IMG/VR virus record: IMGVR_UViG_3300021963_000021
Span: 186,001 to 250,000 of that record
DNA: 64,000 bases
Direction: 5' to 3' (one strand)
In this document: in pieces, positions 3,992 through 54,188 of the stretch
Layout of the letters: every line of letters begins with the position of its first letter
How positions within the stretch are numbered: the stretch's first letter is position 1
Program-made: the position numbers and the translations under genes
The notes under the pieces: generated by a model
Database searches by the model: none
Told to the model about the DNA's origin: nothing
What the model saw: the letters and a program-made list of their open reading frames with translations, nothing else

Positions 3992-4422
3992 TGTGTTAGC
4001 CCTTTGTTAATTTCTGCTGCTACTACTCTTTGTCTTAGTTCTGTTGTTGAGAAGTTATGCTCACGTTTATTGAAATATAATTCAATATCTCTCATTTCAC
4101 ATTCCCAACGCCCTGTGAAATCTTTTTCCATATACTCTTGTCCTAGTATTCTAACATTAATAGTATAAGAAAGCAAGATGTTTACGAGATCTTGTTCTGT
4201 TTCGTAGACAAGAATTTCGTCGACATACTTACAGGCTTTGAGTTGTTCGTAGCGTTCAAAGACACTTTGGATAGGTTTGTTTTTAGTATCCGGTCTATCG
4301 ATGGTAGGATCAGTTTGTAGGCCTACAATCAAATGATCGCATTGTGTCTTTGCTTCTTTGAGCATCATTATATGCCCAGCGTGGAACAAATCAAACGTTG
4401 AACAGGTAAACCCTATTTTCAC
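3988..4422 (-). CDS. cytidylyltransferase (TagD-like, HxGH family)
   Basis: TFDLFHAGH, LIVGLQTD, ERYEQLKACKYVDEI, STTELR. Confidence 0.85.
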   Translation of the reverse strand: MKIGFTCSTFDLFHAGHIMMLKEAKTQCDHLIVGLQTDPTIDRPDTKNKPIQSVFERYEQLKACKYVDEILVYETEQDLVNILLSYTINVRILGQEYMEKDFTGRWECEMRDIELYFNKREHNFSTTELRQRVVAAEINKGLTQ

Positions 4423-4661
4423 ACCATTTCCTCAACGATGCCTAGAACTTCTGCTAGGGCTAGACAAACACCTGCCATTAACAAGTTACCAGAAATTAAA
4501 ACAACGGCTCCGATAATTCGAATACCGCTTTTGGCAAAACTGATATACTTGTGTTTGACAGGATCAGGAATCTTTACTTCTGGTGTTTCTTTTTTAATAA
4601 CTGCGTCTAGTCTGCTTCTAAGATCTTTCATGATCTCTATATTTTGTTCATGGTCATTCAT
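4419..4661 (-). CDS. small hypothetical membrane protein
   Basis: 80 aa with hydrophobic C-terminus; overlaps both neighbours. Confidence 0.55.
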   Translation of the reverse strand: MNDHEQNIEIMKDLRSRLDAVIKKETPEVKIPDPVKHKYISFAKSGIRIIGAVVLISGNLLMAGVCLALAEVLGIVEEMV

Positions 4662-42181: not shown

Positions 42182-42394
42182 TCATTTTGATGATAGCAGA
42201 TCTTGAGCTTGTCGTACTTCGTTTTCTAAGTACTCAATTCTTGCTGCCGCTTCGTCTAACAAAGTGGCTATTTTATCTGGTGCGCCTTCTTCTACGCTCT
42301 TACGACCAGGAATTTGTCTCCTAATTTCAGCTCGCTTACGAAGTCGAAACACCAGACTCTGCTCGCTAACGGGCAGGTGGCTTTCATCTTTCAT
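42182..42394 (-). CDS. hypothetical protein
   Basis: 70-aa coupled ORF. Confidence 0.55.
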   Translation of the reverse strand: MKDESHLPVSEQSLVFRLRKRAEIRRQIPGRKSVEEGAPDKIATLLDEAAARIEYLENEVRQAQDLLSSK

Positions 42395-43281
42395 ATCCTC
42401 TCCATAAAGTTTCTAACCCAGGCCAGACGAGCTTGCTCGTCCATGGCTGTGTATTCAACAATGTTGGCACGGATAGCATCTACTAGTGGATAGTATTCTT
42501 CGTCTAGTTGGTGCTTGATATCTTTGTTCAAGTCCACTAACTTGTCTGTACGTGGATTGCGAGCAACCCATTTTGAAGTCAAGTAGTAAGGGCTCTTGAT
42601 CTTAGCACTCACACCATCTTCTGTATAGAATACATAACCTTCGTGTTTACATTCCTTGGCCATTGCTGATAGTCGTGCCATGTTAGTTGTTACACTTTCT
42701 GGCACAAAGCATCCTAGCACACGACTCATTTCCATTAACATGAACGGATCATGTTCGACTATAGAGTTCCATTTGTTTTCACGATAGCCTAGGATGTACA
42801 TGCCTTCCTTTTCAGGAACGATATGCGGGTCGTTACGGTGAACGCACTCAAACATAAATGTATATCCTTGCCAACGATCACACAAGTCAAAATACTTTGT
42901 TTCGTCGATCAGTTCACGTGCCATTTTAACATAGTCGCTGTCTGTGCTACCAGTAGTAGACACCAACAGTTTGCCGTTATGATAAGTCATAGCAACCATG
43001 AATCCGTTGACTTTACGAAATGCTGTAACTTTGGTTTCTGGAGCAAGCACTGGTGCTTCCTTTTCGATGCCATAGTTATAGATTTTAGTAAATGGGTATG
43101 TCACTAGATTGAAGTCAGTGTCTACAATGGATCCACGACATTCCGCAATAAAGGGATTCCACAGACTATCGTAGAACACTTTCTTCTTGTATTTGAGCAC
43201 GTAGATACCTTCACCAGCTTCTTTCATATTAACTAGGTTGCTGGTTTCTACATACTCCTTCAGCTCATCTTTAAACATCAT
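42391..43281 (-). CDS. T4 Rnl1-like RNA ligase
   Basis: ECRG, FTKIYNY, motif I KVNG, STTGS, FE, EGYV, KIKS.YY. Confidence 0.85.
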   Translation of the reverse strand: MMFKDELKEYVETSNLVNMKEAGEGIYVLKYKKKVFYDSLWNPFIAECRGSIVDTDFNLVTYPFTKIYNYGIEKEAPVLAPETKVTAFRKVNGFMVAMTYHNGKLLVSTTGSTDSDYVKMARELIDETKYFDLCDRWQGYTFMFECVHRNDPHIVPEKEGMYILGYRENKWNSIVEHDPFMLMEMSRVLGCFVPESVTTNMARLSAMAKECKHEGYVFYTEDGVSAKIKSPYYLTSKWVARNPRTDKLVDLNKDIKHQLDEEYYPLVDAIRANIVEYTAMDEQARLAWVRNFMERI

Positions 43282-43739
43282 GTTCTCCAGATTTCTTTAT
43301 AGCCTTCTTCTTCAGTTGGCCATTCAAAATTATCAATCATGCTGCGGACAACATGATCGGGGATTGATTTGCCAGGGCGGCTAGCCAAACGACGAGCGTG
43401 TTCTTCGGCAGACGGAGTAGGAAAGACCACAGCGATGTGCCAGTAGTCGGGTAACATACGGAACTTTCTAGCACGACTTTTTACAGTTGTGTTAGTTTGG
43501 TCCCAAATGATATCTCGACCTGCGGCCCTAGCACGAACTACAGCGCGAGTCATTAGACGAACAGCACGTGGCATTACTTCGTCAAAGACTTCGTTGTAGG
43601 TCTTGCCTAGGCGTTTAGCAAACTTTTCTACATAGACATCGGTGGAAATATATTCCATACCTACTGCCCAGGTTTGGCCTGCCAGCCATGTAGTTTTGCC
43701 ACTAGCCGGCACTCCAACTAAAATATATGCTTTAGCCAT
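43278..43739 (-). CDS. polynucleotide kinase-like P-loop kinase (AAA_33)
   Basis: GVPASGKTT, ISTD, IWDQTN, R...R...IP. Confidence 0.85.
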   Translation of the reverse strand: MAKAYILVGVPASGKTTWLAGQTWAVGMEYISTDVYVEKFAKRLGKTYNEVFDEVMPRAVRLMTRAVVRARAAGRDIIWDQTNTTVKSRARKFRMLPDYWHIAVVFPTPSAEEHARRLASRPGKSIPDHVVRSMIDNFEWPTEEEGYKEIWRT

Positions 43740-44280
43740 GATGTGATTTTACCTCTCCGGTCATTGCGTCTGCGATTGCACGTTCCATAGTAACAGCGAT
43801 CATTCCTGTCGCATCCATGCCCATATCACGACAGCGATAACGTTCCATTCCACTGGTACCACCGTGTAAGTGTCCGTGGAAATGAACAGCACCTCTGTGC
43901 ATTTGATCCCATTCAGCGATAGGATAATGGAACATAACTACCCTAGTTTTTTCATATGTCATACACAAGTACGGATGTACTTCTGCGAAACAACTACGAA
44001 ACACAGGGTCGTTTAACAATTTGCGATCGTGGTTGCCCTCGATCAAAATTTTTGTACCATTTAACCGACGCATGATGTTTACTGCTTTTGCCGCAGGCAA
44101 GAACGCAACATCACCTAATATGTAGACTGTGTCTTCCGGAGCGATAGTGTTATTCCATTCCAACACCATTTGCTCGTTCATATAGTCTACATCGTTGTTA
44201 AATCTTGCTCTCGACTGTGGACAGAATTTCATGATATTGGCATGCCCAAAGTGTAAGTCACTGGTTATCCATGTAGTCAT
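43732..44280 (-). CDS. calcineurin-like metallophosphoesterase
   Basis: SDLHFGH, LGD, GNHD, HYP, HGH.H. Confidence 0.9.
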   Translation of the reverse strand: MTTWITSDLHFGHANIMKFCPQSRARFNNDVDYMNEQMVLEWNNTIAPEDTVYILGDVAFLPAAKAVNIMRRLNGTKILIEGNHDRKLLNDPVFRSCFAEVHPYLCMTYEKTRVVMFHYPIAEWDQMHRGAVHFHGHLHGGTSGMERYRCRDMGMDATGMIAVTMERAIADAMTGEVKSHHG

Positions 44281-44688: not shown

Positions 44689-45204
44689 TTAGTCCCAATC
44701 TTCCTCACGTTGCGGAGGAACCCAAATTTTCTTGTTGCCAAGCTCGTCGTATTCAAAAGCAACACCATTAATTGTGTGAGGCTCGTTTTCGTCATACGTC
44801 CAACCAAGCACTTTCATCATCTTGTGTTTGACCATTAAGTTGGGGCTACGAAAGACTTCAGTATCACGGAAGCCCATCATTACGCCGACTTCGCAGACAG
44901 CACCCGAACGACAAACACCAGCAACACAATGTACAACAACATTCATTCGTTGTTCCATTGCGTGTTCTAGCAGTCTCACTAGTTGTTCTGCTTGCTGATC
45001 AGTGACTTTGAATTCTTCGCCCCATTTGTCATCTCGTTCTAGATCTAAGAACTCAAACTGATGAGTTTCTTTGAACTGATGCCTAGGAGTAGGAAACTCC
45101 ATAGCAGGATCTACGATCTGTATCAACATAGAGTTGATACCAGCATCAATATGATGACCTTTCGGAATGTCTGCCAACGCTACGTTTTGTATCCAAGGAT
45201 TCAT
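44689..45204 (-). CDS. dual-specificity/tyrosine phosphatase-like protein
   Basis: VVVHCVAGVCRSG CX5R loop; GGAG RBS. Confidence 0.85.
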   Translation of the reverse strand: MNPWIQNVALADIPKGHHIDAGINSMLIQIVDPAMEFPTPRHQFKETHQFEFLDLERDDKWGEEFKVTDQQAEQLVRLLEHAMEQRMNVVVHCVAGVCRSGAVCEVGVMMGFRDTEVFRSPNLMVKHKMMKVLGWTYDENEPHTINGVAFEYDELGNKKIWVPPQREEDWD

Positions 45205-45206
45205 TG

Positions 45207-45884
45207 TTATCTCCATAGTAAGTCAAAGTTACCTTTGAGAACAGTAGAACATTTTGATCTACAACCAGTTAAATGATCTTGAACAGAGTCATCTTGGAAT
45301 CGGTAAGTGCGGATTTTATCTCCACGCATACCTGATCCTACCTGTTGGCGTCTATCACTTGCTATACTATTATTATACGATCTTTTGAGTTCTAAGTCAA
45401 TGCGCTGTTGTAAAGTTGCCATAGCTTCGTTGTAGCTATTTTGGCGACTTCGGCATTCGGCTTTGGCTATTATACCTGTAGGAAGGTGTGTGATGCGGCA
45501 GCTATTTTGGTGCTTGTTCCGAAATTGTCCACCCGCTCCTGTACCGCTGTACCATTCGATCTTGAGATCGTTTTTGGTAACAGCAACAGAGTCAGGATCT
45601 GGAGACCCGTCTATGACAGCGACGGTAACAGTTGAAGTGTGGACACGACCTTTTCGTTCGGTCGGAGGCACTCGCTGGATACGATGACCACCGGGCTCAT
45701 TATCTAAGCCTGATAGATCTACACCCTCTACAAGTATCGAACACTCGCCAGGACGTACATCTATCAGGCGGGTAGTTCAACCCAGTTTATTTCCTAGTTT
45801 TTGGTAAGCGGTCGCGAGATCACTTACGAATAGTTTACTATCTTCGCCGCCTTCTGCGGCACGGATTTCAATAGTGCGTTTCAT
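45207..45884 (-). CDS. prfA-like: class I release factor homologue (RF1-type PxT, GGQ; lacks domain 1) with in-frame UGA at codon 36
   Basis: MKRTIEIRAAEGGEDSKLF...KLG*TTRLI...GGHRIQRVPPTERKGRVHTS...GAGGQ...KIRTY; TGA at 45779-45777, same frame on both sides. The ORF track shows only the downstream part. Confidence 0.85.
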
Positions 45885-46099: not shown

Positions 46100-46110
46100 T
46101 CTTTATTTAT

Positions 46111-46188
46111 TGGCCTGCCCGGAGGGATTCGAACCCCCGACCCACAGCTTAGAAGGCTGTTGCTCTAATCCTGCTGAGCTACGGGCAG
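46111..46188 (-). tRNA. tRNA-Arg(TCT)
   Basis: Cloverleaf, loop CTTCTAA, CCA. Confidence 0.95.
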
Positions 46189-46193
46189 AAATT

Positions 46194-46269
46194 TGGAGCG
46201 GGAGACGAGTCTCGAACTCGCGACATCTTGCTTGGAAGGCAAGTGCTCTACCAACTGAGCTACTCCCGC
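46194..46269 (-). tRNA. tRNA-Gly(TCC)
   Basis: Loop CTTCCAA, CCA. Confidence 0.95.
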
Positions 46270-46275
46270 AATGTC

Positions 46276-46479
46276 TTAGGTTGGAAAATATTTTTCCATA
46301 ACTTCCAATTTGTCCATATACTCAGCAATCTGAGCGACTTCTTTTTCGATAGCATCCATAATATCACTGTGTTCGTGGATTGCTGTTGGGTTGTTCAGCA
46401 TCACTTCGACATTCATTTTATGTTTAGTGATGTGTGATCGAAAGTGTTCTTTCGATGCTTCAATGAGTTCTTTACGCAT
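46276..46479 (-). CDS. hypothetical protein (start MRKELIE)
   Basis: Coupled to the upstream ORF stop. Confidence 0.55.
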   Translation of the reverse strand: MRKELIEASKEHFRSHITKHKMNVEVMLNNPTAIHEHSDIMDAIEKEVAQIAEYMDKLEVMEKYFPT

Positions 46480-46736
46480 TATGAGTTCACCGTTTCGCTG
46501 TTTTGCTTCGAATTCCACTCTTGTTTGGCCTTTTGATAGGCGTCTTCGCTTAGGCCATGCCAACCAATACAGTCGCCTGTAGGACTACGACCACAACCGC
46601 AAGTACCTTTTTTCATATCTTCAACTTTTGGAGTCACTTTGTCTTTCCTAAAAATTAAATCGTAATTGTTGTTAAACGCTTTCGATGATGCTCTTGATTG
46701 TATAGCATCACCAGTTATATCGTTTCTTGCTACCAT
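46479..46736 (-). CDS. CDGSH-like Fe-S motif protein
   Basis: CGCGRSPTGDCIGWH (3Cys-1His). Confidence 0.55.
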   Translation of the reverse strand: MVARNDITGDAIQSRASSKAFNNNYDLIFRKDKVTPKVEDMKKGTCGCGRSPTGDCIGWHGLSEDAYQKAKQEWNSKQNSETVNS

Positions 46737-46752
46737 CTACATATCCTCAAAT

Positions 46753-46831
46753 TGGTCCGGGAAGTGGGATTCGAACTCACGATCTCCTGCTCCCAAAGCA
46801 GGCGCTTTAAGCCAGACTAAGCTACACCCGG
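46753..46831 (-). tRNA. tRNA-Pro(TGG)
   Basis: Loop TTTGGGA, CCA. Confidence 0.9.
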
Positions 46832-46835
46832 AAAT

Positions 46836-46909
46836 TGGTTGCGGGTCCTGGAATCGAACCAAGGACTAGAGCTTATGAGACTCTCGAGATACCCCTTCTC
46901 CAACCCGCT
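46836..46909 (-). tRNA. tRNA-Met(CAT), initiator-like
   Basis: Loop CTCATAA, unpaired 1:72, fMet-like D arm. Confidence 0.8.
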
Positions 46910-46916
46910 ATAAACC

Positions 46917-47492
46917 TTATAGGATTCCTTCTTTGGTCAGTGTTGCTACTGCTTCATCGCTTAGAGGAATCTCTGTCTTAATGTTAAGTTCAAGGACTTC
47001 GTCATTGATCTTTTGTTTCTGCTTGCGTAGATTGCTAAGTTCAGTCTTGAACTTGTCAATGTCTCCTGTGCTGAGCACAGAAGTGTCTACGGTATCACTG
47101 TAGCCGTAAATGCTACGACGACTAGTTTCGTTCTTGTCGTTGCGTATCTTATCCAACTTGCCGTTGATTACGACCAAGTCAGCGACTGGTGCGTGTCTGA
47201 CCATTGCTTCTAGCTGACTGATACGCTTGTCAATGAAAGCCGCACGAGTCAACAACAGGTCGATTCCGCTCTGGGCGTTTGCCGCACCTACTAGGCCGCG
47301 GATGTTATATTGCGCAGCCAACAACAGGCCACGACGCTGATCGTTTTCCAACAGCTTCTTGTTGGCAGCATCAATTTCGGCCTTTGCGTCCTGGAACTCA
47401 TTAAGCTGGACATCCAACTTAATATCGATATTTTTCAAAGCATCGCTGATGCTGTTCTGGACTACGTTTGCTTTACGAAGAGTGATGTTCAT
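46917..47492 (-). CDS. hypothetical coiled-coil protein
   Basis: 191 aa with its own promoter and AAGGA RBS. Confidence 0.65.
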   Translation of the reverse strand: MNITLRKANVVQNSISDALKNIDIKLDVQLNEFQDAKAEIDAANKKLLENDQRRGLLLAAQYNIRGLVGAANAQSGIDLLLTRAAFIDKRISQLEAMVRHAPVADLVVINGKLDKIRNDKNETSRRSIYGYSDTVDTSVLSTGDIDKFKTELSNLRKQKQKINDEVLELNIKTEIPLSDEAVATLTKEGIL

Positions 47493-47515
47493 GTGTTTTT
47501 CCTTATGATTTATCT

Positions 47516-47544
47516 ATTATACTGCCTTGACATGCTGTTGTCAA
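47516..47544 (-). promoter_or_regulatory. sigma70 promoter TTGACA-N17-TATAAT
   Basis: Perfect consensus. Confidence 0.8.
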
Positions 47545-47545
47545 C

Positions 47546-47816
47546 AAAAAAATGACGGATCGGTAAAAGGTCAAGTAATAGACCGGACAATAGACAGTGG
47601 AAGGTTTGTAATCTTCCTATGACAATGTACAAGGTACAAAGCACAGAGGTCTATATATTTCCGATTAACAAATGACATTCTATTAGGGATCGGATCACAT
47701 AAACACGGACAGTTTTCAAGACTGTTTGCGTTAAGTTCGGATTAGGCTTGGAGCCTAAGCCATTTTGTCCATCCTCATCTACCTTTTACTTCACCGGCTA
47801 GTTTTAATAAACTAGC
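47546..47816 (-). ncRNA. candidate structured ncRNA (about 270 nt)
   Basis: Nested long-range stems and several hairpins; no ORF on the minus strand. Confidence 0.5.
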
Positions 47817-47821
47817 AAAAC

Positions 47822-47897
47822 TGGTGCCGGTTGTCGGATTCGAACTGACCACATCCGCCTTACAAGAGCGGCGCTCTACCTAATGAGCTAAACCGGC
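47822..47897 (-). tRNA. tRNA-Thr(TGT)
   Basis: Loop CTTGTAA, CCA. Confidence 0.95.
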
Positions 47898-47920
47898 ATA
47901 AAACTATATATCAAACAACT

Positions 47921-48012
47921 TGGCGGAGATAGTTGGATTCGAACCAACGGTAGAGTTTAACCCCTACGACGGTTTAGCAAACCGCTGCCTTCAGCCACTC
48001 AGCCATATCTCC
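47921..48012 (-). tRNA. tRNA-Ser(GCT)
   Basis: Loop TTGCTAA, long variable arm. Confidence 0.95.
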
Positions 48013-48016
48013 GTAT

Positions 48017-48106
48017 TGGCGGAAGCGGTGAGATTCGAACTCACGGAACATTTCTGTTCGTCGGTTTTCAAGACCGGTGCAATCAGCCAGACTCTGCCAC
48101 ACTTCC
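48017..48106 (-). tRNA. tRNA-Ser(TGA)
   Basis: Loop CTTGAAA, long variable arm. Confidence 0.95.
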
Positions 48107-48111
48107 ATAAA

Positions 48112-48187
48112 TGGTAGGTCCTGACAGTCTCGAACTGCCGACATCCGCCGTGTAAAGGCGGCGCTCTACCAACTGAGCTAAGGACCC
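48112..48187 (-). tRNA. tRNA-Val(TAC)
   Basis: Loop TTTACAC, CCA. Confidence 0.95.
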
Positions 48188-48269
48188 AAAAGATCTATTC
48201 TGAAACACACTGGCTGTTGCTTGTCATTGTCTTTAACTACCTCTCGGTGGCGGTAGACCAATGTGTTTT

Positions 48270-49165
48270 AGAATAGTGTTAAGACTGAGATTACATCTTA
48301 ACCATAAGCACCTCTAGCATTACCGTACACCTTGCGAGCATACGTTCTCTAGATATCCACTGAGCCCTATTGCTAGGTATCCCAGTCTGCTTACAGTATC
48401 GCCGTTTTAAGTCAGGCAGTAGACTTGACGCCATATGCTATTCTACACCATCTATCCCGTTAACCTTGCGAGCTATTCGAGTGCGCTAACACTCTACGAA
48501 ACTTCCAGTATAAACTAATGTCACCTTGCGAGCTTCATTAGACTTGATTGTGTTACCACTCAAGTATTAGATACTTTTCACATATGACCGAGGCAGTCTT
48601 TGCGTTTTTGTTTAATGGCTGGAGTTGAACCAGCAACATTCTGTTTAATAGACAGACGATCTACCATTGATCTACATTGCAACCTACCGTGATGAGCTAC
48701 CTCTGTTGCTGTATACTCTTTTGGAATACACAATACAACTCACCACATACCTTTCCTCTCGCGGAGTAATCAGTGATGTTTCACGACCAGTGTCCTGCGT
48801 CAAAACAGTCCACCGCCCATTTACATTGCGCTAAAGCCCTTAGGAGCGACCCCTCGGACAATAACACTACCCTTTCTCATACCAGTTAATAAGTTGGTTT
48901 TGTATGGAAGTCAGCACCACCTGTTACTTTTCACGCACCCTGGTTCCCTTGCGGGCCAGTCGATACGCATTCTTCCCCATACACTTACTTGGCTGTTACA
49001 TCCACCGGTTTTGTCAGTGAACGCATCCTCACGGATGTGAGCAGGCTTGTTTACACGAACCATTGCTGGCGCTAGTATGTAGGCATTCTAGCTTTGGGTC
49101 GATCGCTCGACTTATTCTTCGTAGACGGCGGACCGCCTACAGGATGATAAACCACCCTAGAATTT
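48270..49165 (-). ncRNA. large structured ncRNA, GOLLD-like
   Basis: About 0.9 kb with no long ORF inside a tRNA array; repeated GCAA-capped hairpins and long-range stems. Confidence 0.55.
48611..48681 (-). pseudogene. tRNA-like domain (anticodon ATT) embedded in the large ncRNA
   Basis: Perfect D, anticodon and T arms; two acceptor mismatches; no CCA. Confidence 0.7.
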
Positions 49166-49251
49166 TTAAACCATATAAAAACACACTCACGGACATGGCT
49201 TGTTGGATGCAGCCTGCCTAACCGAACCAACTTCGGCAGTGTGTTTTTATA

Positions 49252-49335
49252 TGGTGCCCCAACCGAGACTTGAACTCGGACGCACTAGGCACTGGCTTCT
49301 AAGACCAGCGTGTCTACCAATTCCACCATCGGGGC
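49252..49335 (-). tRNA. tRNA-Leu(TAG)
   Basis: Loop CTTAGAA, long variable arm. Confidence 0.95.
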
Positions 49336-49393
49336 AATGTTTGTCTAACAATGTTAAAGAGCGTTACGCTGTTTTGTTTAACAGCATATGTAT

Positions 49394-49422
49394 ATTATAT
49401 CTTCTAACTGCCGCTGTGTCAA
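49394..49422 (-). promoter_or_regulatory. internal sigma70 promoter TTGACA-N17-TATAAT
   Basis: Perfect consensus upstream of tRNA-Leu(TAG) and the large ncRNA. Confidence 0.8.
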
Positions 49423-49452
49423 CACATTCTGGACATATTAGAAAATATTTTT

Positions 49453-49526
49453 TGGTGCCCAGACCAAGAATTGAACTTGGAATAATCGCTTATCAAGCGA
49501 CCGTTATACCATTTAACTATCCGGGC
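49453..49526 (-). tRNA. tRNA-Ile(GAT)
   Basis: Loop TTGATAA, CCA. Confidence 0.93.
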
Positions 49527-49535
49527 ATATTGAAT

Positions 49536-49750
49536 TTGTTGTAGTAGTGCCACCATCGTTATTGGCACCATTCACCTGGATTAACAAAGCCCGGGCAGGA
49601 CTCGGTACGTCACTTGGGATACTAGTCCAGTTAGCAACCAATCTGCGCCGATCTTCCGATCAGCCGGGAGTTGAACCCGTCCCCTTCTACTATTTCGGTA
49701 GTTCGAACTTACCTAGATAGCGTGACATTCTCTTGCTGACACTACAACAA
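49536..49750 (-). ncRNA. candidate structured ncRNA (215 nt)
   Basis: 10-bp terminal stem, two T-loop-like hairpins, GGAA tetraloop. Confidence 0.55.
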
Positions 49751-49754
49751 AACT

Positions 49755-49829
49755 TGGCTCCCCAGGGTGGGATCGAACCACCGACAAACGGATTAACAGT
49801 CCGCTACTCTACCTCTGAGCTACTAGGGA
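49755..49829 (-). tRNA. tRNA-Asn(GTT)
   Basis: Loop CTGTTAA. Confidence 0.95.
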
Positions 49830-49835
49830 ATAAAT

Positions 49836-49910
49836 TGGTGGAGGATAGCGGAATCGAACCGCTGACTCAAGCGTGCAAGGCTAGTGTTTTCCCAATTAGA
49901 CTAATCCCCC
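49836..49910 (-). tRNA. tRNA-Ala(TGC)
   Basis: Loop CTTGCAC. Confidence 0.93.
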
Positions 49911-49914
49911 AAAT

Positions 49915-49990
49915 TGGCGCCTCGTAGGGGAGTCGAACCCCTGTGTTCCGCTAGACAGGCGGGCATAATAGACCGTTATATGAACGAGGC
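49915..49990 (-). tRNA. tRNA-Asp(GTC)
   Basis: Loop CTGTCTA. Confidence 0.92.
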
Positions 49991-50000
49991 AAAACTTGTT

Positions 50001-50076
50001 TGGTAGCAGTAGTTGGACTCGAACCAACGATAAACACCGTATGAAGGTGCCGCATTAGCCGCTATGCTATACTGCC
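50001..50076 (-). tRNA. tRNA(CAT), elongator Met or Ile2
   Basis: Loop TTCATAC, paired acceptor. Confidence 0.85.
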
Positions 50077-50080
50077 ATAT

Positions 50081-50225
50081 CCATTTAGAAGTAACACAGT
50101 TTACTATTCTCTTGCTACCGAATGTGTAGTACCTTACAGGTCTACGTTACTAGTATCATCGGCTTTCCGCTTCGAACAAGGTTAGGTCTGATCATGACCC
50201 GACGAGCTGTGTTACTACTAAATGG
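50081..50225 (-). ncRNA. candidate structured ncRNA (145 nt)
   Basis: 18-bp terminal stem with one mismatch; multibranch interior. Confidence 0.55.
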
Positions 50226-50228
50226 TAA

Positions 50229-50305
50229 TGGTGTGCCCTCTGGGATTCGAACCCAGGACCCTCTGATTAAAAGTCAGATGCTCTAACCTACTGAGCTAAG
50301 GGCAC
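50229..50305 (-). tRNA. tRNA-Lys(TTT)
   Basis: Loop CTTTTAA. Confidence 0.95.
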
Positions 50306-50360
50306 AATCGTTTACCAGATTTACCATCATCTCCCATGGTAATTTCCTCCTTAAAAAACT

Positions 50361-50436
<76 letters not shown>

Positions 50437-50442
50437 ATTATA

Positions 50443-50518
50443 TGGTACACGGTACGGGAATCGAACCCGTCTTTCCGCCTTGAAAGGGCAGCGTCCTCAA
50501 CCGATAGACGAACCGTGC
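50443..50518 (-). tRNA. tRNA-Glu(TTC)
   Basis: Loop CTTTCAA. Confidence 0.95.
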
Positions 50519-50546
50519 GTAAAAAATTTTCAATTGTCAAAGAACG

Positions 50547-50623
50547 TGGAGCACAGGGTGGGACTCGAACCCACGAATCAACAGTTTTGCAGACTGCGCC
50601 ATTGGCCTCTCTGGTACCTGTGC
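50547..50623 (-). tRNA. tRNA-Cys(GCA)
   Basis: Loop CTGCAAA, U73. Confidence 0.95.
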
Positions 50624-50637
50624 GTTAAAGTCTATCA

Positions 50638-50666
50638 AGTATATGATAAATCAAACAGCTTGTCAA
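50638..50666 (-). promoter_or_regulatory. internal sigma70 promoter TTGACA-N17-TATACT
   Basis: Near-consensus, upstream of tRNA-Cys. Confidence 0.75.
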
Positions 50667-50751
50667 CTACTATTTTAGGTTTTTGTCGATGATGATCATC
50701 AAAACCGCTAACATGATTAGAACTGCCAATGCCCCATGTGAGTCTCCTTGT

Positions 50752-50825
50752 TGGTGCTCTAGCCAAGAATTGAACTTGAAATTCAGTCTTACCAAGACTG
50801 TGTTATACCATTTAACTACAAGAGC
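50752..50825 (-). tRNA. tRNA-Thr(GGT)
   Basis: Loop TTGGTAA. Confidence 0.93.
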
Positions 50826-50826
50826 A

Positions 50827-50905
50827 TGGTACCCCTGCTCAGATTTGAACTGAGAACAACTTCTCCTTTTGAGAGAGACGACTTTACCAATTTGTCCACA
50901 GGGGC
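50827..50905 (-). tRNA. tRNA-Leu(CAA), short variable arm
   Basis: Loop CTCAAAA; variable region of only about 7 nt. Confidence 0.8.
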
Positions 50906-50911
50906 ATACTT

Positions 50912-50987
50912 TGGTGCTGCCTCCTGGGATCGAACCAGGTTCCTCGGTTCTTCAGACCGGTGCTATGACCACATCAGCTAAAGCAGC
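50912..50987 (-). tRNA. tRNA-Phe(GAA)
   Basis: Loop CTGAAGA. Confidence 0.93.
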
Positions 50988-50997
50988 ATTTAATCTT

Positions 50998-51072
50998 TGG
51001 TGGATCTTGTAGGATTTGAACCTACGACCAACAGCGTGTCGAGCTGCTACTCTACCACTGAGCTAAAGATCC
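50998..51072 (-). tRNA. tRNA-Val(GAC)
   Basis: Loop TCGACAC. Confidence 0.9.
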
Positions 51073-51073
51073 T

Positions 51074-51147
51074 TGGGGTGAAACCGGGAATCGAACCCTG
51101 TCTACCTGTTTCACAGACAGGTGTGCGACCACTACACTAGTAACACC
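51074..51147 (-). tRNA. tRNA-His(GTG)
   Basis: Loop CTGTGAA, G-1:C73; some stem mismatches. Confidence 0.85.
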
Positions 51148-51152
51148 ATTAT

Positions 51153-51229
51153 TGGCCGGCCCGGAGAGACTCGAACTCCCAACCTCTAGTTTCGAAGACT
51201 AGCACTCTAATCCATTGAGTTACGGACCG
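51153..51229 (-). tRNA. tRNA-Arg(TCG)
   Basis: Loop CTTCGAA. Confidence 0.93.
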
Positions 51230-51235
51230 ATAACT

Positions 51236-51309
51236 TGGCTGGGGATGATGGATTCGAACCACCACAGACGGAATCAAAATCCGTAGTCCTACCATTAGAC
51301 GAATCCCCA
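51236..51309 (-). tRNA. tRNA-Gln(TTG)
   Basis: Loop TTTTGAT. Confidence 0.93.
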
Positions 51310-51313
51310 ATAT

Positions 51314-51387
51314 TGGCACCGGACCAGAGACTCGAACTCCGACGAACGGTTTTGGAGACCGTCATGCTGCCATTACATCAGCCCGAT
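51314..51387 (-). tRNA. tRNA-Trp(CCA)
   Basis: Loop CTCCAAA; D stem ATGT/GCAT gives U11:A24. Confidence 0.93.
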
Positions 51388-51388
51388 A

Positions 51389-51742
51389 TTATTTGATTGT
51401 GTCGTACCGAGTATCTTCGGTTTCGATAAAGTTGACCATTCCAACAGAGATATGATATCCTTCTGTTTTCATAGCTTGATATGCTTTTTGATACACGTCT
51501 GATTCTAAGAGATTCTTTTGAAAATCTCTAGCTTTAAACATGTCTTTAGAAAAGAAGTAGACGTTTTCTACTTGTGTTGTAGCATCCCAATCCCATGACT
51601 GCTTATCTTCTATAAGCCCTTGTTCTACACAGTCTTTTAGAAACGCAACGAATTCTAAGGAGATATCTTCTCTAAAGTTGATATCATCTTGGGTCTGAAA
51701 TTCAGCTCCGTAGTAAATTTGCTGTATTTGTGTAGCTATCAT
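51389..51742 (-). CDS. hypothetical protein inside the tRNA array
   Basis: 117 aa, AAGGA RBS, TAAATA motif upstream. Confidence 0.55.
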   Translation of the reverse strand: MIATQIQQIYYGAEFQTQDDINFREDISLEFVAFLKDCVEQGLIEDKQSWDWDATTQVENVYFFSKDMFKARDFQKNLLESDVYQKAYQAMKTEGYHISVGMVNFIETEDTRYDTIK

Positions 51743-51768
51743 GATTGGGATCCTTTTAGCTATTTATC

Positions 51769-51855
51769 TGGTGGAGGAAGTAAGATTCGAACCTACTAGT
51801 CCCTAAGAAAACAGATTTACAGTCTGCCGCACCCCTCCAACTGTGCCGTTCCTCC
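51769..51855 (-). tRNA. tRNA-Tyr(GTA)
   Basis: Loop CTGTAAA, long variable arm. Confidence 0.95.
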
Positions 51856-52100
51856 ATAATAAGTTACGCACTCATAGTCTATGACTACCTGTCCTTCCAG
51901 TCAACGGAAGTAGAATGCGTGTATTGAAATGCTCTCCGCTACGCTGTCATGCCCGTTCCAAGGGTCAAGAGAAAGCATTTTAATACGCTACCATTTATAC
52001 TCCTGCGTTTTCGCCACAGTTTCATCCGGTAGGCCGCCCGTTTGCTGGATGTTTAACGTGCCCAGCGAGGTCCTCGTTACCTCTTTTTCACACGTAGTAC

Positions 52101-52488: not shown

Positions 52489-53061
52489 TTACAACATTTG
52501 GCTAACATCTTCGTTGAACCTTATGGTAGCAACGACCCTTAGTGTGTCATAGGGATTGTGTACACCATGCGGAACATTGATGCGTAGTATAGCAGGTTTT
52601 GTTAGTTCAAGTCTATGGACTTCTCTTACCGAACTGTGTGAGTTGCCTCCGCAGTCATAGACTGGATAGAACACATCTGGATCGTCATTAACCTTTTCGT
52701 AGAACAGTGTTGTGGTGCCTTCGCAGTGTTCTAAAGGAAAATTCATAGCAAAGGTTGGTTCGTACAAAGTCCAATCTTCGTCTTTGGCATCAATGTGAAT
52801 GAATACTGACTCAGGATTAGCAGGGTCTGTGATTTCCATACTGTTCTTTGGAATACAGAAAAAGATCAATTGTCTAATAGTAAGATTAAAGTTGTCCTTG
52901 AGCATCTTGACCAGGTCAGGAAGTTCTCTTTCGACTTCATCAGGGAAGTGGCACCACCAAAGAGTGTCGGTGTTTCCTTTGGTATTGCGAAAATCAATCA
53001 ATGCCTGTCTATGTTTTTCAAAGTCAGGTATGTTTATAAATTTTGAATATTTCATTCCCAA
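52489..53061 (-). CDS. 2OG-Fe(II) oxygenase/cupin-like protein
   Basis: IHID...NFP...HGV...R.VATIRF. Confidence 0.55.
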   Translation of the reverse strand: MGMKYSKFINIPDFEKHRQALIDFRNTKGNTDTLWWCHFPDEVERELPDLVKMLKDNFNLTIRQLIFFCIPKNSMEITDPANPESVFIHIDAKDEDWTLYEPTFAMNFPLEHCEGTTTLFYEKVNDDPDVFYPVYDCGGNSHSSVREVHRLELTKPAILRINVPHGVHNPYDTLRVVATIRFNEDVSQML

Positions 53062-54188
53062 ACGTGTGCGCCTTTTTTAGGTACAGCAAAATTCAAATAA
53101 GTTTCAATTTTAGCTAGATCTTCTTTGGTTTTCAACGAGCATAGTTCGTTAGCAAAGTGTAATTCAACACCCAAATCTAATGCTAGTTGTAGAAGTTCAC
53201 TTCTACGCTCTACATCGTCGGTTAAACAGTACATGCTACACAGCACAATACCATCAGGGCGTTCTTTTATGTAGTGTTCTAGACCAGGTTGCCAGTCCAT
53301 ATGTTCGTTTTCAAACTCATAGCTGTTGTAACTGATCTTGTTTTTGACACAATATGGTTCTATAATGGCACGCTGCATTGGTAAGGGGATGTCTTTTGAA
53401 AACTTAGAATTCCAGCCAGCATAGGTAATAAAGCTCTTGCCAGTGTAGTCACCGGTCTGTGTTACTTCGTAGTCGCCAGGCAAGCGCATAAAGCCCCCAG
53501 GCAGTCGACGACCCCATTCTTCGCCTTCGATAAGGATACGCATATCCATACTAACACGAGTGTAGCCTTCTTCGTTGTTGACATTTCCGTGTATGTGTTC
53601 TTGGAAGAACAAATGACTCTGACCAGGTTTGAGTGTAACTGGCCATGCGTGTTTTAAACACTCATCTTCAAACTGTTCGAGACTCCACTTTTCAGCTAGT
53701 ACACGTTTAGTGACTTCTCTACTGATATCCAGATCCATCATCCACATGGTGTTAGTGCCTTTAGCTTCTGTAAAAGGTGTCCAAATGGTTCGGCAACCAC
53801 GACCATTGCCAACAAAGATACCTTGGTGGAAGGCCAACCTACGACCAACTTTGGCCTGCTGTGGAATCACTACACGCAGAGTTCCTTGGCGTTGTATCAT
53901 GTAACGTTTGTTTTGTATACGTTGAGGTACAATACTTTGAGCAAACTCGTCAAACAGTTCCATAAAGTCTCTGCGTGAACAGGCATTTTGAACATGCTGG
54001 CTGACTTTAACAATCTCGGGAGGAGATAAAACTTCGTGTAGTGTCTCTAATTCTTTGACCTGTGGTGCGACTTCTTGTACGATCGACAGGGCCCATGCCG
54101 GCCAGTTGTACTTGTTTACATCATAGTTAAGGGTTTTATTATCCCAATGTTCCTGTAAAGGTGTTAAAGTTGCCATTCTATTCTCCAT
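53052..54188 (-). CDS. 2OG-Fe(II) oxygenase fused to a small alpha/beta domain
   Basis: FHQG, LKPGQ..LF..EH.HGN.NN.EGYTRVSMD.R; C-terminal DGIVL.S domain. Confidence 0.6.
   Translation of the reverse strand: MENRMATLTPLQEHWDNKTLNYDVNKYNWPAWALSIVQEVAPQVKELETLHEVLSPPEIVKVSQHVQNACSRRDFMELFDEFAQSIVPQRIQNKRYMIQRQGTLRVVIPQQAKVGRRLAFHQGIFVGNGRGCRTIWTPFTEAKGTNTMWMMDLDISREVTKRVLAEKWSLEQFEDECLKHAWPVTLKPGQSHLFFQEHIHGNVNNEEGYTRVSMDMRILIEGEEWGRRLPGGFMRLPGDYEVTQTGDYTGKSFITYAGWNSKFSKDIPLPMQRAIIEPYCVKNKISYNSYEFENEHMDWQPGLEHYIKERPDGIVLCSMYCLTDDVERRSELLQLALDLGVELHFANELCSLKTKEDLAKIETYLNFAVPKKGAHVWE

What the first reader, a model, noticed from the sequence alone, without database searches (positions are those of the whole stretch)
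49536..49750. 215-nt RNA with two T-loop-like hairpins between tRNA-Asn and tRNA-Ile
It has a 10-bp closing stem, GGTAAG-TTCGAA-CTACC and CGGG-TTCAACT-CCCG (tRNA T-loop motifs), a GATC-GGAA-GATC hairpin and a GTCAC/GTGAC long-range pair. Paired T-loops are used by RNase P, T-boxes and Y-like RNAs to mimic or clamp tRNA elbows, so this is a candidate tRNA-binding or tRNA-mimicking RNA.
Basis: partly seen in the sequence, partly recalled or inferred. Interest (0 to 1): 0.6.

Follow-up and report, generated by a model that had tools for sequence, protein, structure and literature searches.

The report
Circular self-pairing RNA in phage tRNA array
A previously undescribed, strongly conserved ~216-nt structured RNA sits between tRNA genes of uncultured freshwater jumbo phages, appears in metatranscriptomes with its two ends joined (a circle), and carries tRNA-like arms plus a loop that always stays self-complementary, which suggests it pairs with copies of itself.

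Summary
The feature is real and is not ordinary. Window 49537-49752 (minus strand) encodes one member of a new RNA family with no Rfam 15 match even at E<=10. It occurs in more than 119 viral contigs, and 97 distinct copies were recovered. Across 100 sequences 98.4% of cells pair, and 31 of 44 pairs show compensatory changes. The fold has an 11-bp closing helix, a T-arm identical in form to a tRNA's, a D-arm-like GG hairpin, an optional GNRA hairpin, an invariant UUCGAA hexaloop and a covarying pseudoknot. One loop always begins with a 6-8-nt palindrome that changes identity at least 22 times. That is the signature of a symmetric intermolecular kissing loop, as in OLE and GOLLD. Copies abut tRNAs of many identities. 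In four metatranscriptomes the RNA is far deeper than the neighbouring ORFs. In two independent studies, contigs join the 3' end of the closing helix to its 5' end. No such junction exists in 2.9 M viral or 241 M metagenome DNA records. tRNA mimicry is partly supported. A tRNA clamp or Y-RNA reading is not supported. Function remains inferred.

The parts
49537..49752 (-). The RNA as seen joined end to end: about 216 nt, RNA positions 3-218. A second run gives positions 4-220 plus one extra letter.
   Evidence: Back-joints 49752->49537 (X18: 196-nt contig, 91 and 105 nt on the two sides) and 49751->49535 (X9). R1 match 49525-49756 at 232.9 bits.
49741..49751 (-). P1 5' strand, part of the closing helix.
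   Evidence: Pairs with 49535-49545. 99.9% of cells pair and 4 pairs are compensatory. The three terminal U-A pairs are nearly invariant (98-100 of 100).
49535..49545 (-). P1 3' strand.
49737..49740 (-). P2 5' strand, GUCA.
   Evidence: Covaries with 49609-49612. The third pair reads CG 63, UA 32, UG 4.
49609..49612 (-). P2 3' strand, UGAC.
   Evidence: helix 2.
49722..49736 (-). Conserved unpaired joiner GCAAGAGAA.GUCAC.
Evidence: Invariant or nearly invariant columns in A1.
49689..49721 (-). P3 (49717-49721 with 49689-49693) enclosing the P4 hairpin (49697-49713). The P4 loop is the invariant hexaloop UUCGAA at 49702-49707.
   Evidence: 3 of 5 and 5 of 6 pairs are compensatory. The loop is identical in 85 of 85 sequences.
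49665..49679 (-). P5, a tRNA-type T-arm. Its 7-nt loop UUCAACU is at 49669-49675.
   Evidence: The closing pair reads CG 45, UA 45, AU 6, GC 2. R1 positions 67-90 weakly match tRNA T-arms.
49647..49664 (-). Variable, optional 7-bp hairpin capped by the GNRA tetraloop GGAA.
   Evidence: All 5 modelled pairs are compensatory (helix 6). GNRA occurs in 57 of 71 copies and the hairpin is absent in about 20% of copies.
49634..49646 (-). D-arm-like hairpin: a 3-4-bp stem and a loop containing GG.
   Evidence: Stem variants are GCA/UGC, GUAC/GUAC, GUC/GAC, GUCU/AGAC, GCCU/AGGC and AUAC/GUAU. GG is in the loop in 74 of 89 copies.
49613..49633 (-). Conserved joiner with CUGGA and UCCCAAG.
   Evidence: Nearly invariant. 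Two G-C pairs are predicted (helix 7). Its role has not been tested.
49603..49605 (-). Pseudoknot 5' strand, CCG.
   Evidence: Pairs with 49553-49555 in the P7 loop. Pairing is 94-100%, with 3, 1 and 6 pair types. Family variants are CCG/UGG, UCU/GGA, CCU/AGG and CCA/UGG.
49553..49555 (-). Pseudoknot 3' strand, UGG, inside the P7 loop.
49575..49599 (-). P6 hairpin (49596-49599 with 49575-49578).
   Evidence: All 4 pairs are compensatory (helix 8).
49590..49595 (-). Self-complementary hexamer CCCGGG at the 5' side of the P6 loop, the proposed symmetric kissing site. With its neighbours it forms an 8-mer.
   Evidence: 81 of 84 copies hold a perfect palindrome of 6 nt or more here, with 14 different ones. 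The symmetric positions pair in 82 of 85 copies, against 3-67 of 170 cells when slid. Palindrome identity switches at least 22 times on the tree.
49547..49568 (-). P7 hairpin (49563-49568 with 49547-49552).
   Evidence: All 6 pairs are compensatory (helix 9).
49527..49536 (-). Conserved 3' tail AAUUCAAUAU. It lies outside the joined form and runs up to the 5' end of tRNA-Ile.
   Evidence: Conserved AAAUUCAAU. A downstream tRNA starts at this boundary in 50 of 97 copies.
49753..49754 (-). AG dinucleotide between the CCA end of tRNA-Asn and the first nucleotide of the joined form.
   Evidence: At least 90% conserved. An upstream tRNA ends here in 67 of 97 copies.
49755..49829 (-). Upstream tRNA-Asn(GTT).
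49453..49526 (-). Downstream tRNA-Ile(GAT).
50638..50666 (-). Consensus-like promoter (11 of 12). It is the likely start of the polycistronic unit tRNA-Cys ... tRNA-Asn, element, tRNA-Ile. This is an inference.
   Evidence: The next 12-of-12 promoter, at 49394-49422, follows tRNA-Ile.
42391..44280 (-). Three overlapping ORFs: an Rnl1-like RNA ligase (42391-43281), an AAA_33 kinase (43278-43739) and a metallophosphoesterase (43732-44280). Together they would form a candidate RNA 'heal and seal' set. The link to the element is inferred.
   Evidence: Pfam hits. Distribution in other genomes.

Best explanation
This is a member of a new family of about 215-235-nt structured RNAs encoded inside the tRNA arrays of uncultured, mostly freshwater, T4-like jumbo phages.

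Shown:
- The family is widespread.
- It has a compact pseudoknotted fold closed by a 9-11-bp helix.
- It carries a tRNA-type T-arm, a D-arm-like GG hairpin, a GNRA hairpin and an invariant UUCGAA hexaloop.
- One loop starts with a 6-8-nt sequence that is always self-complementary although its letters change.
- In most genomes the RNA begins 2 nt after the CCA of one tRNA and ends about 10 nt before the next tRNA.
- In RNA libraries it is far more abundant than the flanking ORFs.
- RNA contigs from two independent studies join its 3' end to its 5' end.

Inferred mechanism:
- It is transcribed with the tRNAs and cut out by the tRNA-processing nucleases.
- P1 holds the ends together and an RNA ligase seals them into an exonuclease-resistant circle. 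The ligase would be the phage's own Rnl1-type ligase with kinase and phosphoesterase where present, or otherwise a host ligase.
- Circles then associate through symmetric kissing of the palindromic loop, and possibly also through the self-complementary UUCGAA loop, into dimers or larger homo-oligomers. OLE, ROOL and GOLLD RNAs do the same.

Most speculative step: the particle displays a tRNA-elbow mimic with no cleavable ends. It would act during infection as a decoy or docking site for proteins that recognise tRNA elbows, such as processing or modification enzymes or tRNA-directed host nucleases.
For: Family and fold:
- nhmmer found 135 hits and 97 unique full-length copies.
- R1 scores are 135-255 bits for 99 of the 100 copies (one divergent MAG copy scored 72).
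- 98.4% of cells pair, 31 of 44 pairs are compensatory, and 0 of 500 shuffles reach this.
- The pseudoknot covaries.
- There is no Rfam family at E<=10.

Context:
- An upstream tRNA ends at the boundary in 67 of 97 copies and a downstream tRNA starts at the boundary in 50 of 97. There are 23-24 different tRNA identities on each side.

Expression:
- Bins 49449-49842 have depth 4185-4573 in X9, against about 32-45 over ORFs.
- In X18 the same bins have depth 778-1092, against 0 over ORFs.

End joining:
- The joints are 49752->49537 (X18, depth 255, 91 nt on the shorter side) and 49751->49535 (X9). They come from different studies.
- Junction patterns are absent from DNA. In viral contigs there were 6 chance hits with no R1 match for one pattern and 0 hits for the other. 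In metagenome contigs there were 0 and 0.
- The terminal P1 pairs and both flanks are nearly invariant, unlike the inner pairs.

Self-pairing:
- Kretsch et al. 2025 (PMC12286853) use the same argument: palindromic covariation in a loop can only be intermolecular.

Ligase:
- Rnl1-like ligase, kinase and metallophosphoesterase ORFs lie 2-4 kb beyond the array.
Against: - The circle rests on assembled contigs (Logan), not on raw reads. The share of joined molecules is unknown. Template switching by reverse transcriptase on an abundant RNA with paired ends cannot be excluded. The joints were called at 90% likeness.
- The two joints differ by 1-2 nt and one inserted letter.
- Two complete element-bearing genomes lack the Rnl1 and kinase genes. 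The own genome has no RtcB. The sealing enzyme is therefore not identified.
- No oligomer has been observed. The UUCGAA loop never varies, so its partner cannot be tested.
- The elbow contact between T-loop and GG loop involves invariant bases and is untested.
- No neighbouring gene or experiment points to a target, so the decoy function is a guess.
Confidence: 0.5

Rival explanations
1. It is a linear stable RNA released from the tRNA precursor, like T4 species 1 and 2 RNAs (rnaC, rnaD). On this view the joined contigs are artefacts of reverse transcription or assembly.
For: - The genomic setting is the same as T4 rnaC/rnaD.
- The nearest cultured relatives by a structural protein are T4-like cyanophages.
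- The joints come from contigs only, at 90% likeness, and differ slightly between runs.
- There is no universal phage ligase.
Against: - Two independent studies give nearly the same joint with no shared letters at the junction ('both' = 0).
- The X18 contig consists only of the element in permuted order, with 91 and 105 nt on the two sides.
- The invariant helix ends and flanks suggest a sequence-specific end reaction.
- There is no sequence or structure homology to rnaC/rnaD.
Confidence: 0.25
2. One reading: a trans-acting RNA that clamps tRNA elbows with paired T-loops, as RNase P, T-box stem I or Y-like RNAs do.
For: There are two loops with the UUCGA/UUCRA T-loop sequence, and the element lies among tRNA genes.
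Against: - Both T-loop sequences are hairpin loops of the tRNA type, not interdigitated internal-loop T-loops.
- One has its own GG-loop partner in cis, which makes it an elbow mimic rather than an elbow receptor.
- No Rfam match to YrlA, T-box or RNase P.
- No Ro gene in the genome.
Confidence: 0.1
3. It is a ribozyme that cuts itself out, joins its own ends, or does both.
For: - It has many invariant unpaired nucleotides (GCAAGAGAA, AGUAGAAGG, GUGAAUG) and a pseudoknot.
- A joined product is seen.
- Some genomes lack a phage ligase.
Against: - No known self-cleaving or splicing family matches.
- The flanking tRNAs already supply cleavage sites for RNase P and 3' processing.
- The joints are not identical in the two runs, which fits trimming plus ligase better than a precise ribozyme reaction.
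Confidence: 0.1
4. It is a cis-acting spacer that controls processing or transcription of the tRNA array, with no function as a free RNA.
For: It is conserved in position inside the arrays, and its flanks are conserved.
Against: - It accumulates far above its tRNA neighbours and the ORFs in RNA libraries.
- A 44-pair fold with a pseudoknot and a palindromic loop is far more than a spacer needs.
- Its neighbours differ from genome to genome.
Confidence: 0.05

Closest known systems
GOLLD and ROOL RNAs (Rfam RF02032 and ROOL)
   Same: - Encoded by phages near or within tRNA islands.
- Abundant during infection, with no known protein partner.
- Elaborate pseudoknotted folds with GNRA loops.
- Loops whose palindromic covariation marks symmetric intermolecular kissing (PMC12286853).
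- A GOLLD lies 800 nt away in this same array.
   Different: - The element is 216 nt, against 580-830 nt.
- No sequence or model similarity.
- GOLLD co-occurs in only 3 of the 6 element-bearing genomes checked (the window's own genome, plus 2 of 5 others).
- The element contains tRNA-type T- and D-like arms.
- It shows an end-joined form, which the sources read here do not describe for GOLLD or ROOL.
T4 species 1 and species 2 stable RNAs (rnaC, rnaD)
   Same: Small stable RNAs of unknown function encoded directly beside tRNAs in the tRNA cluster of a T4-type phage. From general knowledge, they are co-processed with the tRNAs.
   Different: - No match of model R1 to rnaC/rnaD or anywhere else in T4.
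- They are shorter, at 139 and 119 nt.
- Neither a palindromic loop nor circularity is known for them.
Bacterial Y RNA-like YrlA (RF02553)
   Same: A long terminal helix plus a tRNA-like module with a T-arm and a D-like GG loop. YrlA is also found in some phages.
   Different: - The only YrlA alignment in the searched stretch (15.7 bits against a gathering score of 69) lies on the neighbouring tRNAs.
- No Ro/TROVE gene in the genome.
- The element has a much larger pseudoknotted 3' domain.
Ligase-made circular RNAs of Archaea (circular C/D box sRNAs, rRNA and tRNA-intron circles; PMC9014305, PMC3326292, abstracts seen)
   Same: A DNA-encoded small structured RNA. Its ends sit at the base of a terminal helix and are joined after endonucleolytic release. 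An ATP-dependent RNA ligase is a candidate sealing enzyme.
   Different: - The producer is a phage of bacteria, not an archaeon.
- There is no C/D box or bulge-helix-bulge motif.
- Release would rely on tRNA processing.
- The ligase has not been identified.
Symmetric palindromic kissing loops (HIV-1 dimerisation initiation site; OLE L9.3; GOLLD L21a)
   Same: A hairpin loop holds a 6-nt palindrome with a central CG. Its outer positions change only in symmetric pairs.
   Different: Here the loop is 15-16 nt with the palindrome at its 5' edge. The outermost pair of the 8-mer form competes with the last P6 pair.
Viroid-like covalently closed circular RNAs and Obelisks
   Same: Similar size range. 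Circular by contig evidence and found in metatranscriptomes.
   Different: - It is encoded in a DNA phage genome, with a single copy in the window's own genome, so it is not an RNA replicon.
- It has no known ribozyme.

Membership tests
tRNA (RF00005 / ARAGORN) | Cloverleaf with acceptor stem, anticodon arm and T-arm, scoring above threshold. | tested here: not met
   ARAGORN and Rfam call the two neighbours but nothing in 49527-49754. Only the T-arm resembles one.
YrlA / bacterial Y RNA | Match to RF02553 at or above the gathering score. | tested here: not met
   No match on the element. A 15.7-bit alignment (gathering score 69) falls on the adjacent tRNAs.
YrlA / bacterial Y RNA | A Ro (TROVE) protein gene in the same genome, usually adjacent. 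| tested here: not met
   PF05731 is absent from the 364-kb genome, while the control genomes ring.
Double T-loop tRNA-elbow receptors (RNase P S-domain, T-box stem I) | Match to the family models. | tested here: not met
   No RNase P or T-box match at E<=10.
Double T-loop tRNA-elbow receptors (RNase P S-domain, T-box stem I) | Two interdigitated pentanucleotide T-loops forming a flat stacking platform. | not testable with these tools
   This needs a 3D structure. At the sequence level both loops are hairpin loops of the tRNA T-arm type, and one has a cis GG-loop partner.
GOLLD/ROOL-type self-assembling phage RNAs | Match to the family model. | tested here: not met
   GOLLD matches 48282-48746 only. 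There is no ROOL or GOLLD match on the element.
GOLLD/ROOL-type self-assembling phage RNAs | Encoded in phage tRNA islands. | tested here: met
GOLLD/ROOL-type self-assembling phage RNAs | Loop with palindromic covariation, marking a symmetric intermolecular kissing loop. | tested here: met
   81 of 84 copies are palindromic, with 14 different palindromes. The symmetric positions pair in 82 of 85 copies, and there are at least 22 switches.
GOLLD/ROOL-type self-assembling phage RNAs | Homo-oligomer observed in solution or by cryo-EM. | not testable with these tools
   This needs native gels, SEC-MALS or cryo-EM.
Covalently closed circular RNA made from a linear DNA-encoded precursor | RNA molecules in which the 3' end is joined to the 5' end. 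| tested here: met
   Back-joined contigs appear in X9 and X18, which are different studies. This is contig-level evidence only.
Covalently closed circular RNA made from a linear DNA-encoded precursor | The joined order is absent from DNA. | tested here: met
   There is no true junction in viral contigs or metagenome contigs. All 123 full-length DNA copies are collinear. The tool did not offer DNA runs from the same samples.
Covalently closed circular RNA made from a linear DNA-encoded precursor | Resistance to 3' exonuclease, or circle-specific gel mobility. | not testable with these tools
   Experiment needed.
Covalently closed circular RNA made from a linear DNA-encoded precursor | An identified joining enzyme. 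| tested here: inconclusive
   - Rnl1-like ligase, kinase and phosphoesterase are in the window.
- The ligase and kinase are found in 2 of 5 other element-bearing genomes, and the esterase in 5 of 5.
- The own genome has no RtcB.
- The genome-wide PF09511 scan missed even the known ORF and is therefore uninformative.
T4 rnaC/rnaD stable RNAs | Sequence or structure homology. | tested here: not met
   R1 finds nothing at rnaC/rnaD (L244 1909-2172) or elsewhere in T4.
tmRNA (standard or permuted) | tRNA-like domain with an alanine acceptor stem plus a tag reading frame. | tested here: not met
   ARAGORN finds none. Rfam gives only 9 bits, on the T-loop.
Viroid-like RNA replicon | No DNA template. 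| tested here: not met
   It is encoded in more than 130 DNA contigs.

The most novel reading that the evidence does not exclude
Jumbo phages of bacteria make a dedicated, DNA-encoded circular non-coding RNA. It is excised from the tRNA-array transcript by the tRNA-processing machinery and sealed by an RNA ligase into a 216-nt ring. The ring then self-assembles through one or two self-complementary loops into a defined RNA-only oligomer that displays uncleavable tRNA-elbow mimics. This would be a new class of viral RNA particle, alongside GOLLD and ROOL.
Probability: 0.4. Interest if true: 0.9.

Novelty: new variant of a known kind. Interest (0 to 1): 0.8.

Why it matters
Phage tRNA islands are already known to hide large RNAs of unknown function, GOLLD and ROOL, which were recently shown to build RNA-only cages. 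This element adds a small, tractable and very well-supported member to that group. It has three testable properties: release by tRNA processing, end-joining into a circle, and self-pairing through a palindromic loop.

If the circle is confirmed, I found no earlier report of a family of ligated circular non-coding RNAs encoded by bacterial viruses. That would give the RNA ligase and end-healing genes that many large phages carry beside their tRNA genes a second possible purpose, beyond tRNA repair.

At 216 nt it can be synthesised, mutated and imaged easily. That could make the open question of what tRNA-island RNAs do experimentally approachable.

Tried and rejected
- Rfam 15, gathering scan on the whole window and E<=10 on 49400-49900: nothing on the element.
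- blastn against 50,697 cultured-phage records: no match.
- R1 on T4 and on the three nearest cyanophage genomes: no match.
- Intramolecular kissing between the two UUCGA-type loops was considered. It is rejected because position 83 is A in about 40% of copies while the partner C50 never changes.
- Pairing of UUCGAA with the palindromic loop is rejected, because only the CUCGAG variants would fit.
- The single-sequence fold z-scores are weak, -1.8 on the minus strand and -2.5 on the plus strand. The strand and fold were therefore settled by covariation and by the tRNA strand.
- DNA-level tandem or permuted copies as the source of the back-joint: none found.
- Obligate linkage to GOLLD or to the phage Rnl1 is rejected: GOLLD in 3 of 6 and Rnl1 in 3 of 6 element-bearing genomes, counting the window's own.
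- Rnl2-type family PF09414: absent from the own genome and from G002, present in G003 and G005, and weak in G001 at 29 bits.
- The PF09511 genome scan gave a false negative on the own genome and is ignored.
- Protein coding is rejected. Only spurious plus-strand ORFs overlap, and they run through the tRNA genes.
- Prokaryote genomes: only 6 short freshwater MAG contigs from five different lineages, probably mis-binned phage DNA, so no host can be inferred.
- Literature searches found no prior description.
- The term search for 'T-large' in PMC5737381 found nothing.
- The large protein searches, structure prediction and complex prediction were not used, because the finding is an RNA.
Full report
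**What is there.** The window is bases 186001-250000 of a 363,943-bp IMG/VR virus record that is estimated to be complete. All 28 tRNA genes lie on the minus strand between 46.1 and 51.9 kb. A GOLLD RNA (RF02032, 211.6 bits) lies at 48282-48746. The finding is the 228-nt gap between tRNA-Asn(GTT) 49755-49829 and tRNA-Ile(GAT) 49453-49526. I read it on the minus strand and number it as RNA position = 49755 minus window coordinate. Rfam 15 has no family for it, either at gathering scores or at E<=10 with relaxed filters. ARAGORN sees no tRNA or tmRNA in it.

**It is a large family.**
- Proteins next to the array retrieved 123 related viral contigs. blastn then found 70-93% identical copies of the element in sixteen of them.
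- nhmmer recovered 135 copies, of which 123 are full length and 97 are distinct.
- A covariance model (R1) scores 99 of the 100 tested copies at 135-255 bits (one divergent MAG copy scored 72) and finds exactly one copy in the window's own genome.
- None of 50,697 cultured-phage records has it by blastn.
- R1 finds nothing in T4 or in the three nearest cyanophages.
- In 185,579 prokaryote species genomes, only six short freshwater MAG contigs from five different lineages carry it. These are probably mis-binned phage DNA.
- A baseplate/protease protein places the phage distantly (30-45% identity) beside T4-like cyanophages.

**Secondary structure.** On the model-based alignment of 100 sequences, 98.4% of cells form standard pairs. 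31 of 44 pairs have changes on both sides. No shuffle out of 500 reaches any of the five measures, and sliding the partners drops pairing to 36-50%. The helices, in RNA positions, are:
- P1, 4-14 with 210-220. Matching 2-nt insertions occur on both strands in part of the family.
- P2, 15-18 with 143-146.
- P3, 34-38 with 62-66.
- P4, 42-47 with 54-58, capped by the hexaloop UUCGAA, which is identical in 85 of 85 sequences.
- P5, 76-79 with 87-90, with the 7-nt loop UUCRAYN. This is a T-arm in every respect, and the only weak secondary hits of R1 are tRNA T-arms.
- A variable hairpin, 91-108. It is present in about 80% of copies and GNRA-capped in 57 of 71.
- A 3-4-bp hairpin, 109-121, with GG in its loop in 74 of 89 copies. 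Its stem variants are clearly compensatory.
- P6, 156-159 with 177-180.
- P7, 187-192 with 203-208.
- A pseudoknot. CCG 150-152 pairs with UGG 200-202 inside the P7 loop, and the two sides change together as CCG/UGG, UCU/GGA, CCU/AGG and CCA/UGG.

Long unpaired stretches are nearly invariant: GCAAGAGAA, AGUAGAAGG, CUGGA, UCCCAAG and GUGAAUG.

The closing stem, both T-loop-like hairpins and the GGAA hairpin are real. The long-range pair is mis-assigned. The strand UGAC covaries with GUCA at 15-18, not with GUCAC at 29-33, which does not compensate. The single-sequence folding z-scores are unimpressive at -1.8 and -2.5. The case therefore rests on comparative evidence, not on thermodynamics.

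**A loop that must stay self-complementary.** The P6 loop begins with a palindrome in 81 of 84 alignable copies, against 37% of shuffled regions. There are 14 different palindromes, among them CUCGAG, GCCGGC, UCCGGA, CCCGGG, GUCGAC, GCUAGC and 8-10-nt forms such as GCUCGAGC and AGCCCGGGCU. A divergent subfamily with a different 3' domain carries CGGCCG at the corresponding place.
- In alignment columns, the outer positions read CG 39, GC 25, UA 16, AU 1.
- The next positions read CG 50, UA 32, and the centre is CG in 78 of 85.
- In total 164 of 170 cells pair, against 3-67 when the partner is slid.
- On a tree built without these columns, palindrome identity changes at least 22 times, each time to another palindrome.

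Adjacent nucleotides of one loop cannot pair with each other. This pattern therefore points to pairing between two copies of the RNA. Kretsch et al. used the same reasoning for OLE L9.3 and GOLLD L21a, whose kissing contacts they saw by cryo-EM (PMC12286853). The invariant UUCGAA loop is also a 6-nt palindrome with a central CG. If it kisses as well, each RNA is bivalent and could build more than a dimer. Because it never varies, this cannot be tested by sequence.

**Context and processing.**
- In 67 of 97 distinct copies, a same-strand tRNA ends exactly at the 5' boundary, as CCA, then AG, then UUUUGU.
- In 50 of 97, a tRNA starts at the 3' boundary, about 10 nt after P1.
- The neighbours have 23-24 different identities on each side. 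The element is therefore a module of the arrays and not a partner of a particular tRNA.
- In the window it lies in a unit that probably starts at a near-consensus promoter at 50666-50638. The unit ends before a perfect consensus promoter at 49422-49394, which drives tRNA-Leu and GOLLD. This is an inference from consensus matches.
- The AG before the RNA, the tail AAUUCAAU after it and the three terminal U-A pairs of P1 are invariant or nearly so, whereas the inner P1 pairs vary. This suggests sequence-specific end processing.

**RNA evidence.** Twenty public runs from sixteen studies hold the stretch, and six of them are metatranscriptomes. I laid four RNA runs on window 46100-52000.
- Only assembled contigs are available, so depths are per contig and cannot rank genes strictly.
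- The contrast is nevertheless large. The element's bins have summed depths of 4185-4573 (X9), 778-1092 (X18), 118-328 (X17) and 141-280 (X10).
- ORF bins have about 32-45, 0, 0 and about 18 in the same runs. The adjacent tRNA bins have 20-150.
- Uniform DNA carry-over cannot give this pattern.
- The GOLLD region is deeper still.

Two runs from different studies contain contigs that go back on themselves. In X18, a 196-nt contig made only of the element runs, in the RNA sense, from 49625 to 49537 and continues at 49752 to 49648. It has 91 and 105 nt on the two sides. In X9 a contig joins 49535 to 49751 with one extra letter. In RNA terms the 3' strand of P1 (A218 or A220) is joined to its 5' strand (U3 or U4). 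That leaves a 3-5-nt loop closing P1, so the molecule is a ring of about 216 nt.

**Controls for the ring.** A tandem or permuted DNA copy would give the same contigs.
- I searched for the junction in DNA with patterns for both P1 variants.
- In 2.9 million viral contigs, the short variant gave six hits. None matches R1, and the one I read (L246) lies in unrelated sequence. The long variant gave none.
- In 241 million metagenome records, both variants gave none.
- All 123 full-length DNA copies are collinear.

Caveats remain. The share of joined molecules cannot be read from contigs, because a minor chimeric path can be assembled. Reverse-transcriptase template switching between paired ends is a known source of false back-joints. 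The joints were called at 90% likeness. The tool did not report whether DNA runs hold the joined form. I put the existence of a genuine joined form at about 0.6.

**Who joins the ends.** Beyond the array, the window has three overlapping ORFs:
- an Rnl1-type RNA ligase (42391-43281, PF09511, E 3e-12);
- an AAA_33 kinase (43278-43739);
- a calcineurin-type phosphoesterase (43732-44280).

Together these supply the activities of a heal-and-seal RNA repair system. From general knowledge, T4 Rnl1 seals breaks in stem-closed loops and is the standard enzyme for circularising RNA.

Among five other large element-bearing genomes, the esterase is present in 5, but the ligase and kinase are in only 2. 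Two complete genomes lack both. The own genome has no RtcB. The phage ligase is therefore a candidate, not a requirement. A host ligase or an intrinsic reaction remains possible.

**What it resembles.**
- By setting and by the palindromic loop it works like GOLLD/ROOL, but it is not a member of those families. GOLLD is present in only 3 of the 6 element-bearing genomes checked, counting the window's own.
- By setting it resembles T4 rnaC/rnaD, but it is not homologous to them.
- By its T-arm plus GG loop it resembles the tRNA-like module of YrlA, tmRNA and viral tRNA-like structures. It fails the YrlA tests, with no model match and no Ro gene.
- By its joined ends it resembles archaeal ligase-made circular sRNAs. 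It differs from viroid-like replicons in being DNA-encoded.
- The order T-arm, capped 7-bp hairpin, GG hairpin is that of a tRNA's upper half read across closed acceptor ends. In other words, it looks like a tRNA elbow with no ends for RNase P, RNase Z or the CCA enzyme to act on. This is an observation from the sequence. The hairpin is optional, so I give the observation little weight.

**Most likely mechanism, and its weak points.**
- I consider the following shown: a new, expressed, highly structured RNA family of phage tRNA arrays.
- I consider the following probable: release by tRNA processing, an end-joined form, and symmetric self-pairing.
- I consider the following speculative: a role as a stable decoy or docking particle for proteins that recognise tRNA elbows.

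**Literature.** Six full-text searches and the papers read gave no description of such an RNA.

Noticed in passing
window 47493-47821 (minus); conserved core about 47538-47797: A second unannotated structured RNA candidate lies between an ORF and tRNA-Thr. Its MFE is -90.3 kcal/mol with z -4.5. A core of about 260 nt is conserved in 48 related loci. A 289-nt metatranscriptome contig covers it at depth 693. It has no Rfam match. A perfect consensus promoter (47544-47516) overlaps its 3' end.
   Followed up: partly
window 50077-50228 (minus): This 152-nt spacer between tRNA-Lys and tRNA-Met folds into an 18-bp closing stem (z -4.45) and is conserved in 14 loci. It contains the same two motifs as the element, UUCGAA and GCAAGAGAA, so it may be a shorter relative. 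It is not abundant in the four RNA runs.
   Followed up: partly
window 48282-49251 (minus): The Rfam model covers only the 3' domain of the GOLLD RNA (48282-48746). The 5' domain up to about 49251 is conserved in 16 loci and is the deepest stretch in all four metatranscriptomes. A tRNA-like insert, called 'tRNA-Asn att' by ARAGORN (48610-48681), sits inside it. It appears to be driven, together with tRNA-Leu, by a perfect consensus promoter at 49422-49394.
   Followed up: partly
window 42391-44280 (minus): Three overlapping ORFs encode an Rnl1-like RNA ligase, an AAA_33 (polynucleotide-kinase-like) protein and a metallophosphoesterase. This looks like a split heal-and-seal RNA repair set next to the tRNA array. 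The esterase is in all five other element-bearing genomes checked, while the ligase and kinase are in two.
   Followed up: partly
window 44689-45671 (minus): A dual-specificity phosphatase-like ORF (44689-45216) and an RF-1-domain ORF (45207-45671, of the peptidyl-tRNA hydrolase or release-factor-like type) lie between the repair genes and the tRNA array.
   Followed up: no
window 54201-55352 (minus): A radical SAM ORF lies upstream of the array. The neighbouring ORFs 53052-54188, 55301-56356 and 56358-57509 have no clear Pfam family. ORF 53052-54188 has 95 relatives in viral contigs but none in cultured phages.
   Followed up: no
loci L252-L257 (genome contigs): The only prokaryote-genome records with the element are short contigs of freshwater MAGs. 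They are assigned to a cyanobacterium, Crocinitomicaceae, Planctomycetia, Polynucleobacter and Kapaibacterium. This spread suggests phage contigs binned into MAGs by mistake.
   Followed up: partly
joints, e.g. 51233->49543 and 50078->48259: Other 'goes back' or 'skips' joints in the metatranscriptome contigs link the element or GOLLD to different tRNAs than in the window. This fits the shuffled gene order of tRNA arrays in related phages seen in DNA.
   Followed up: no
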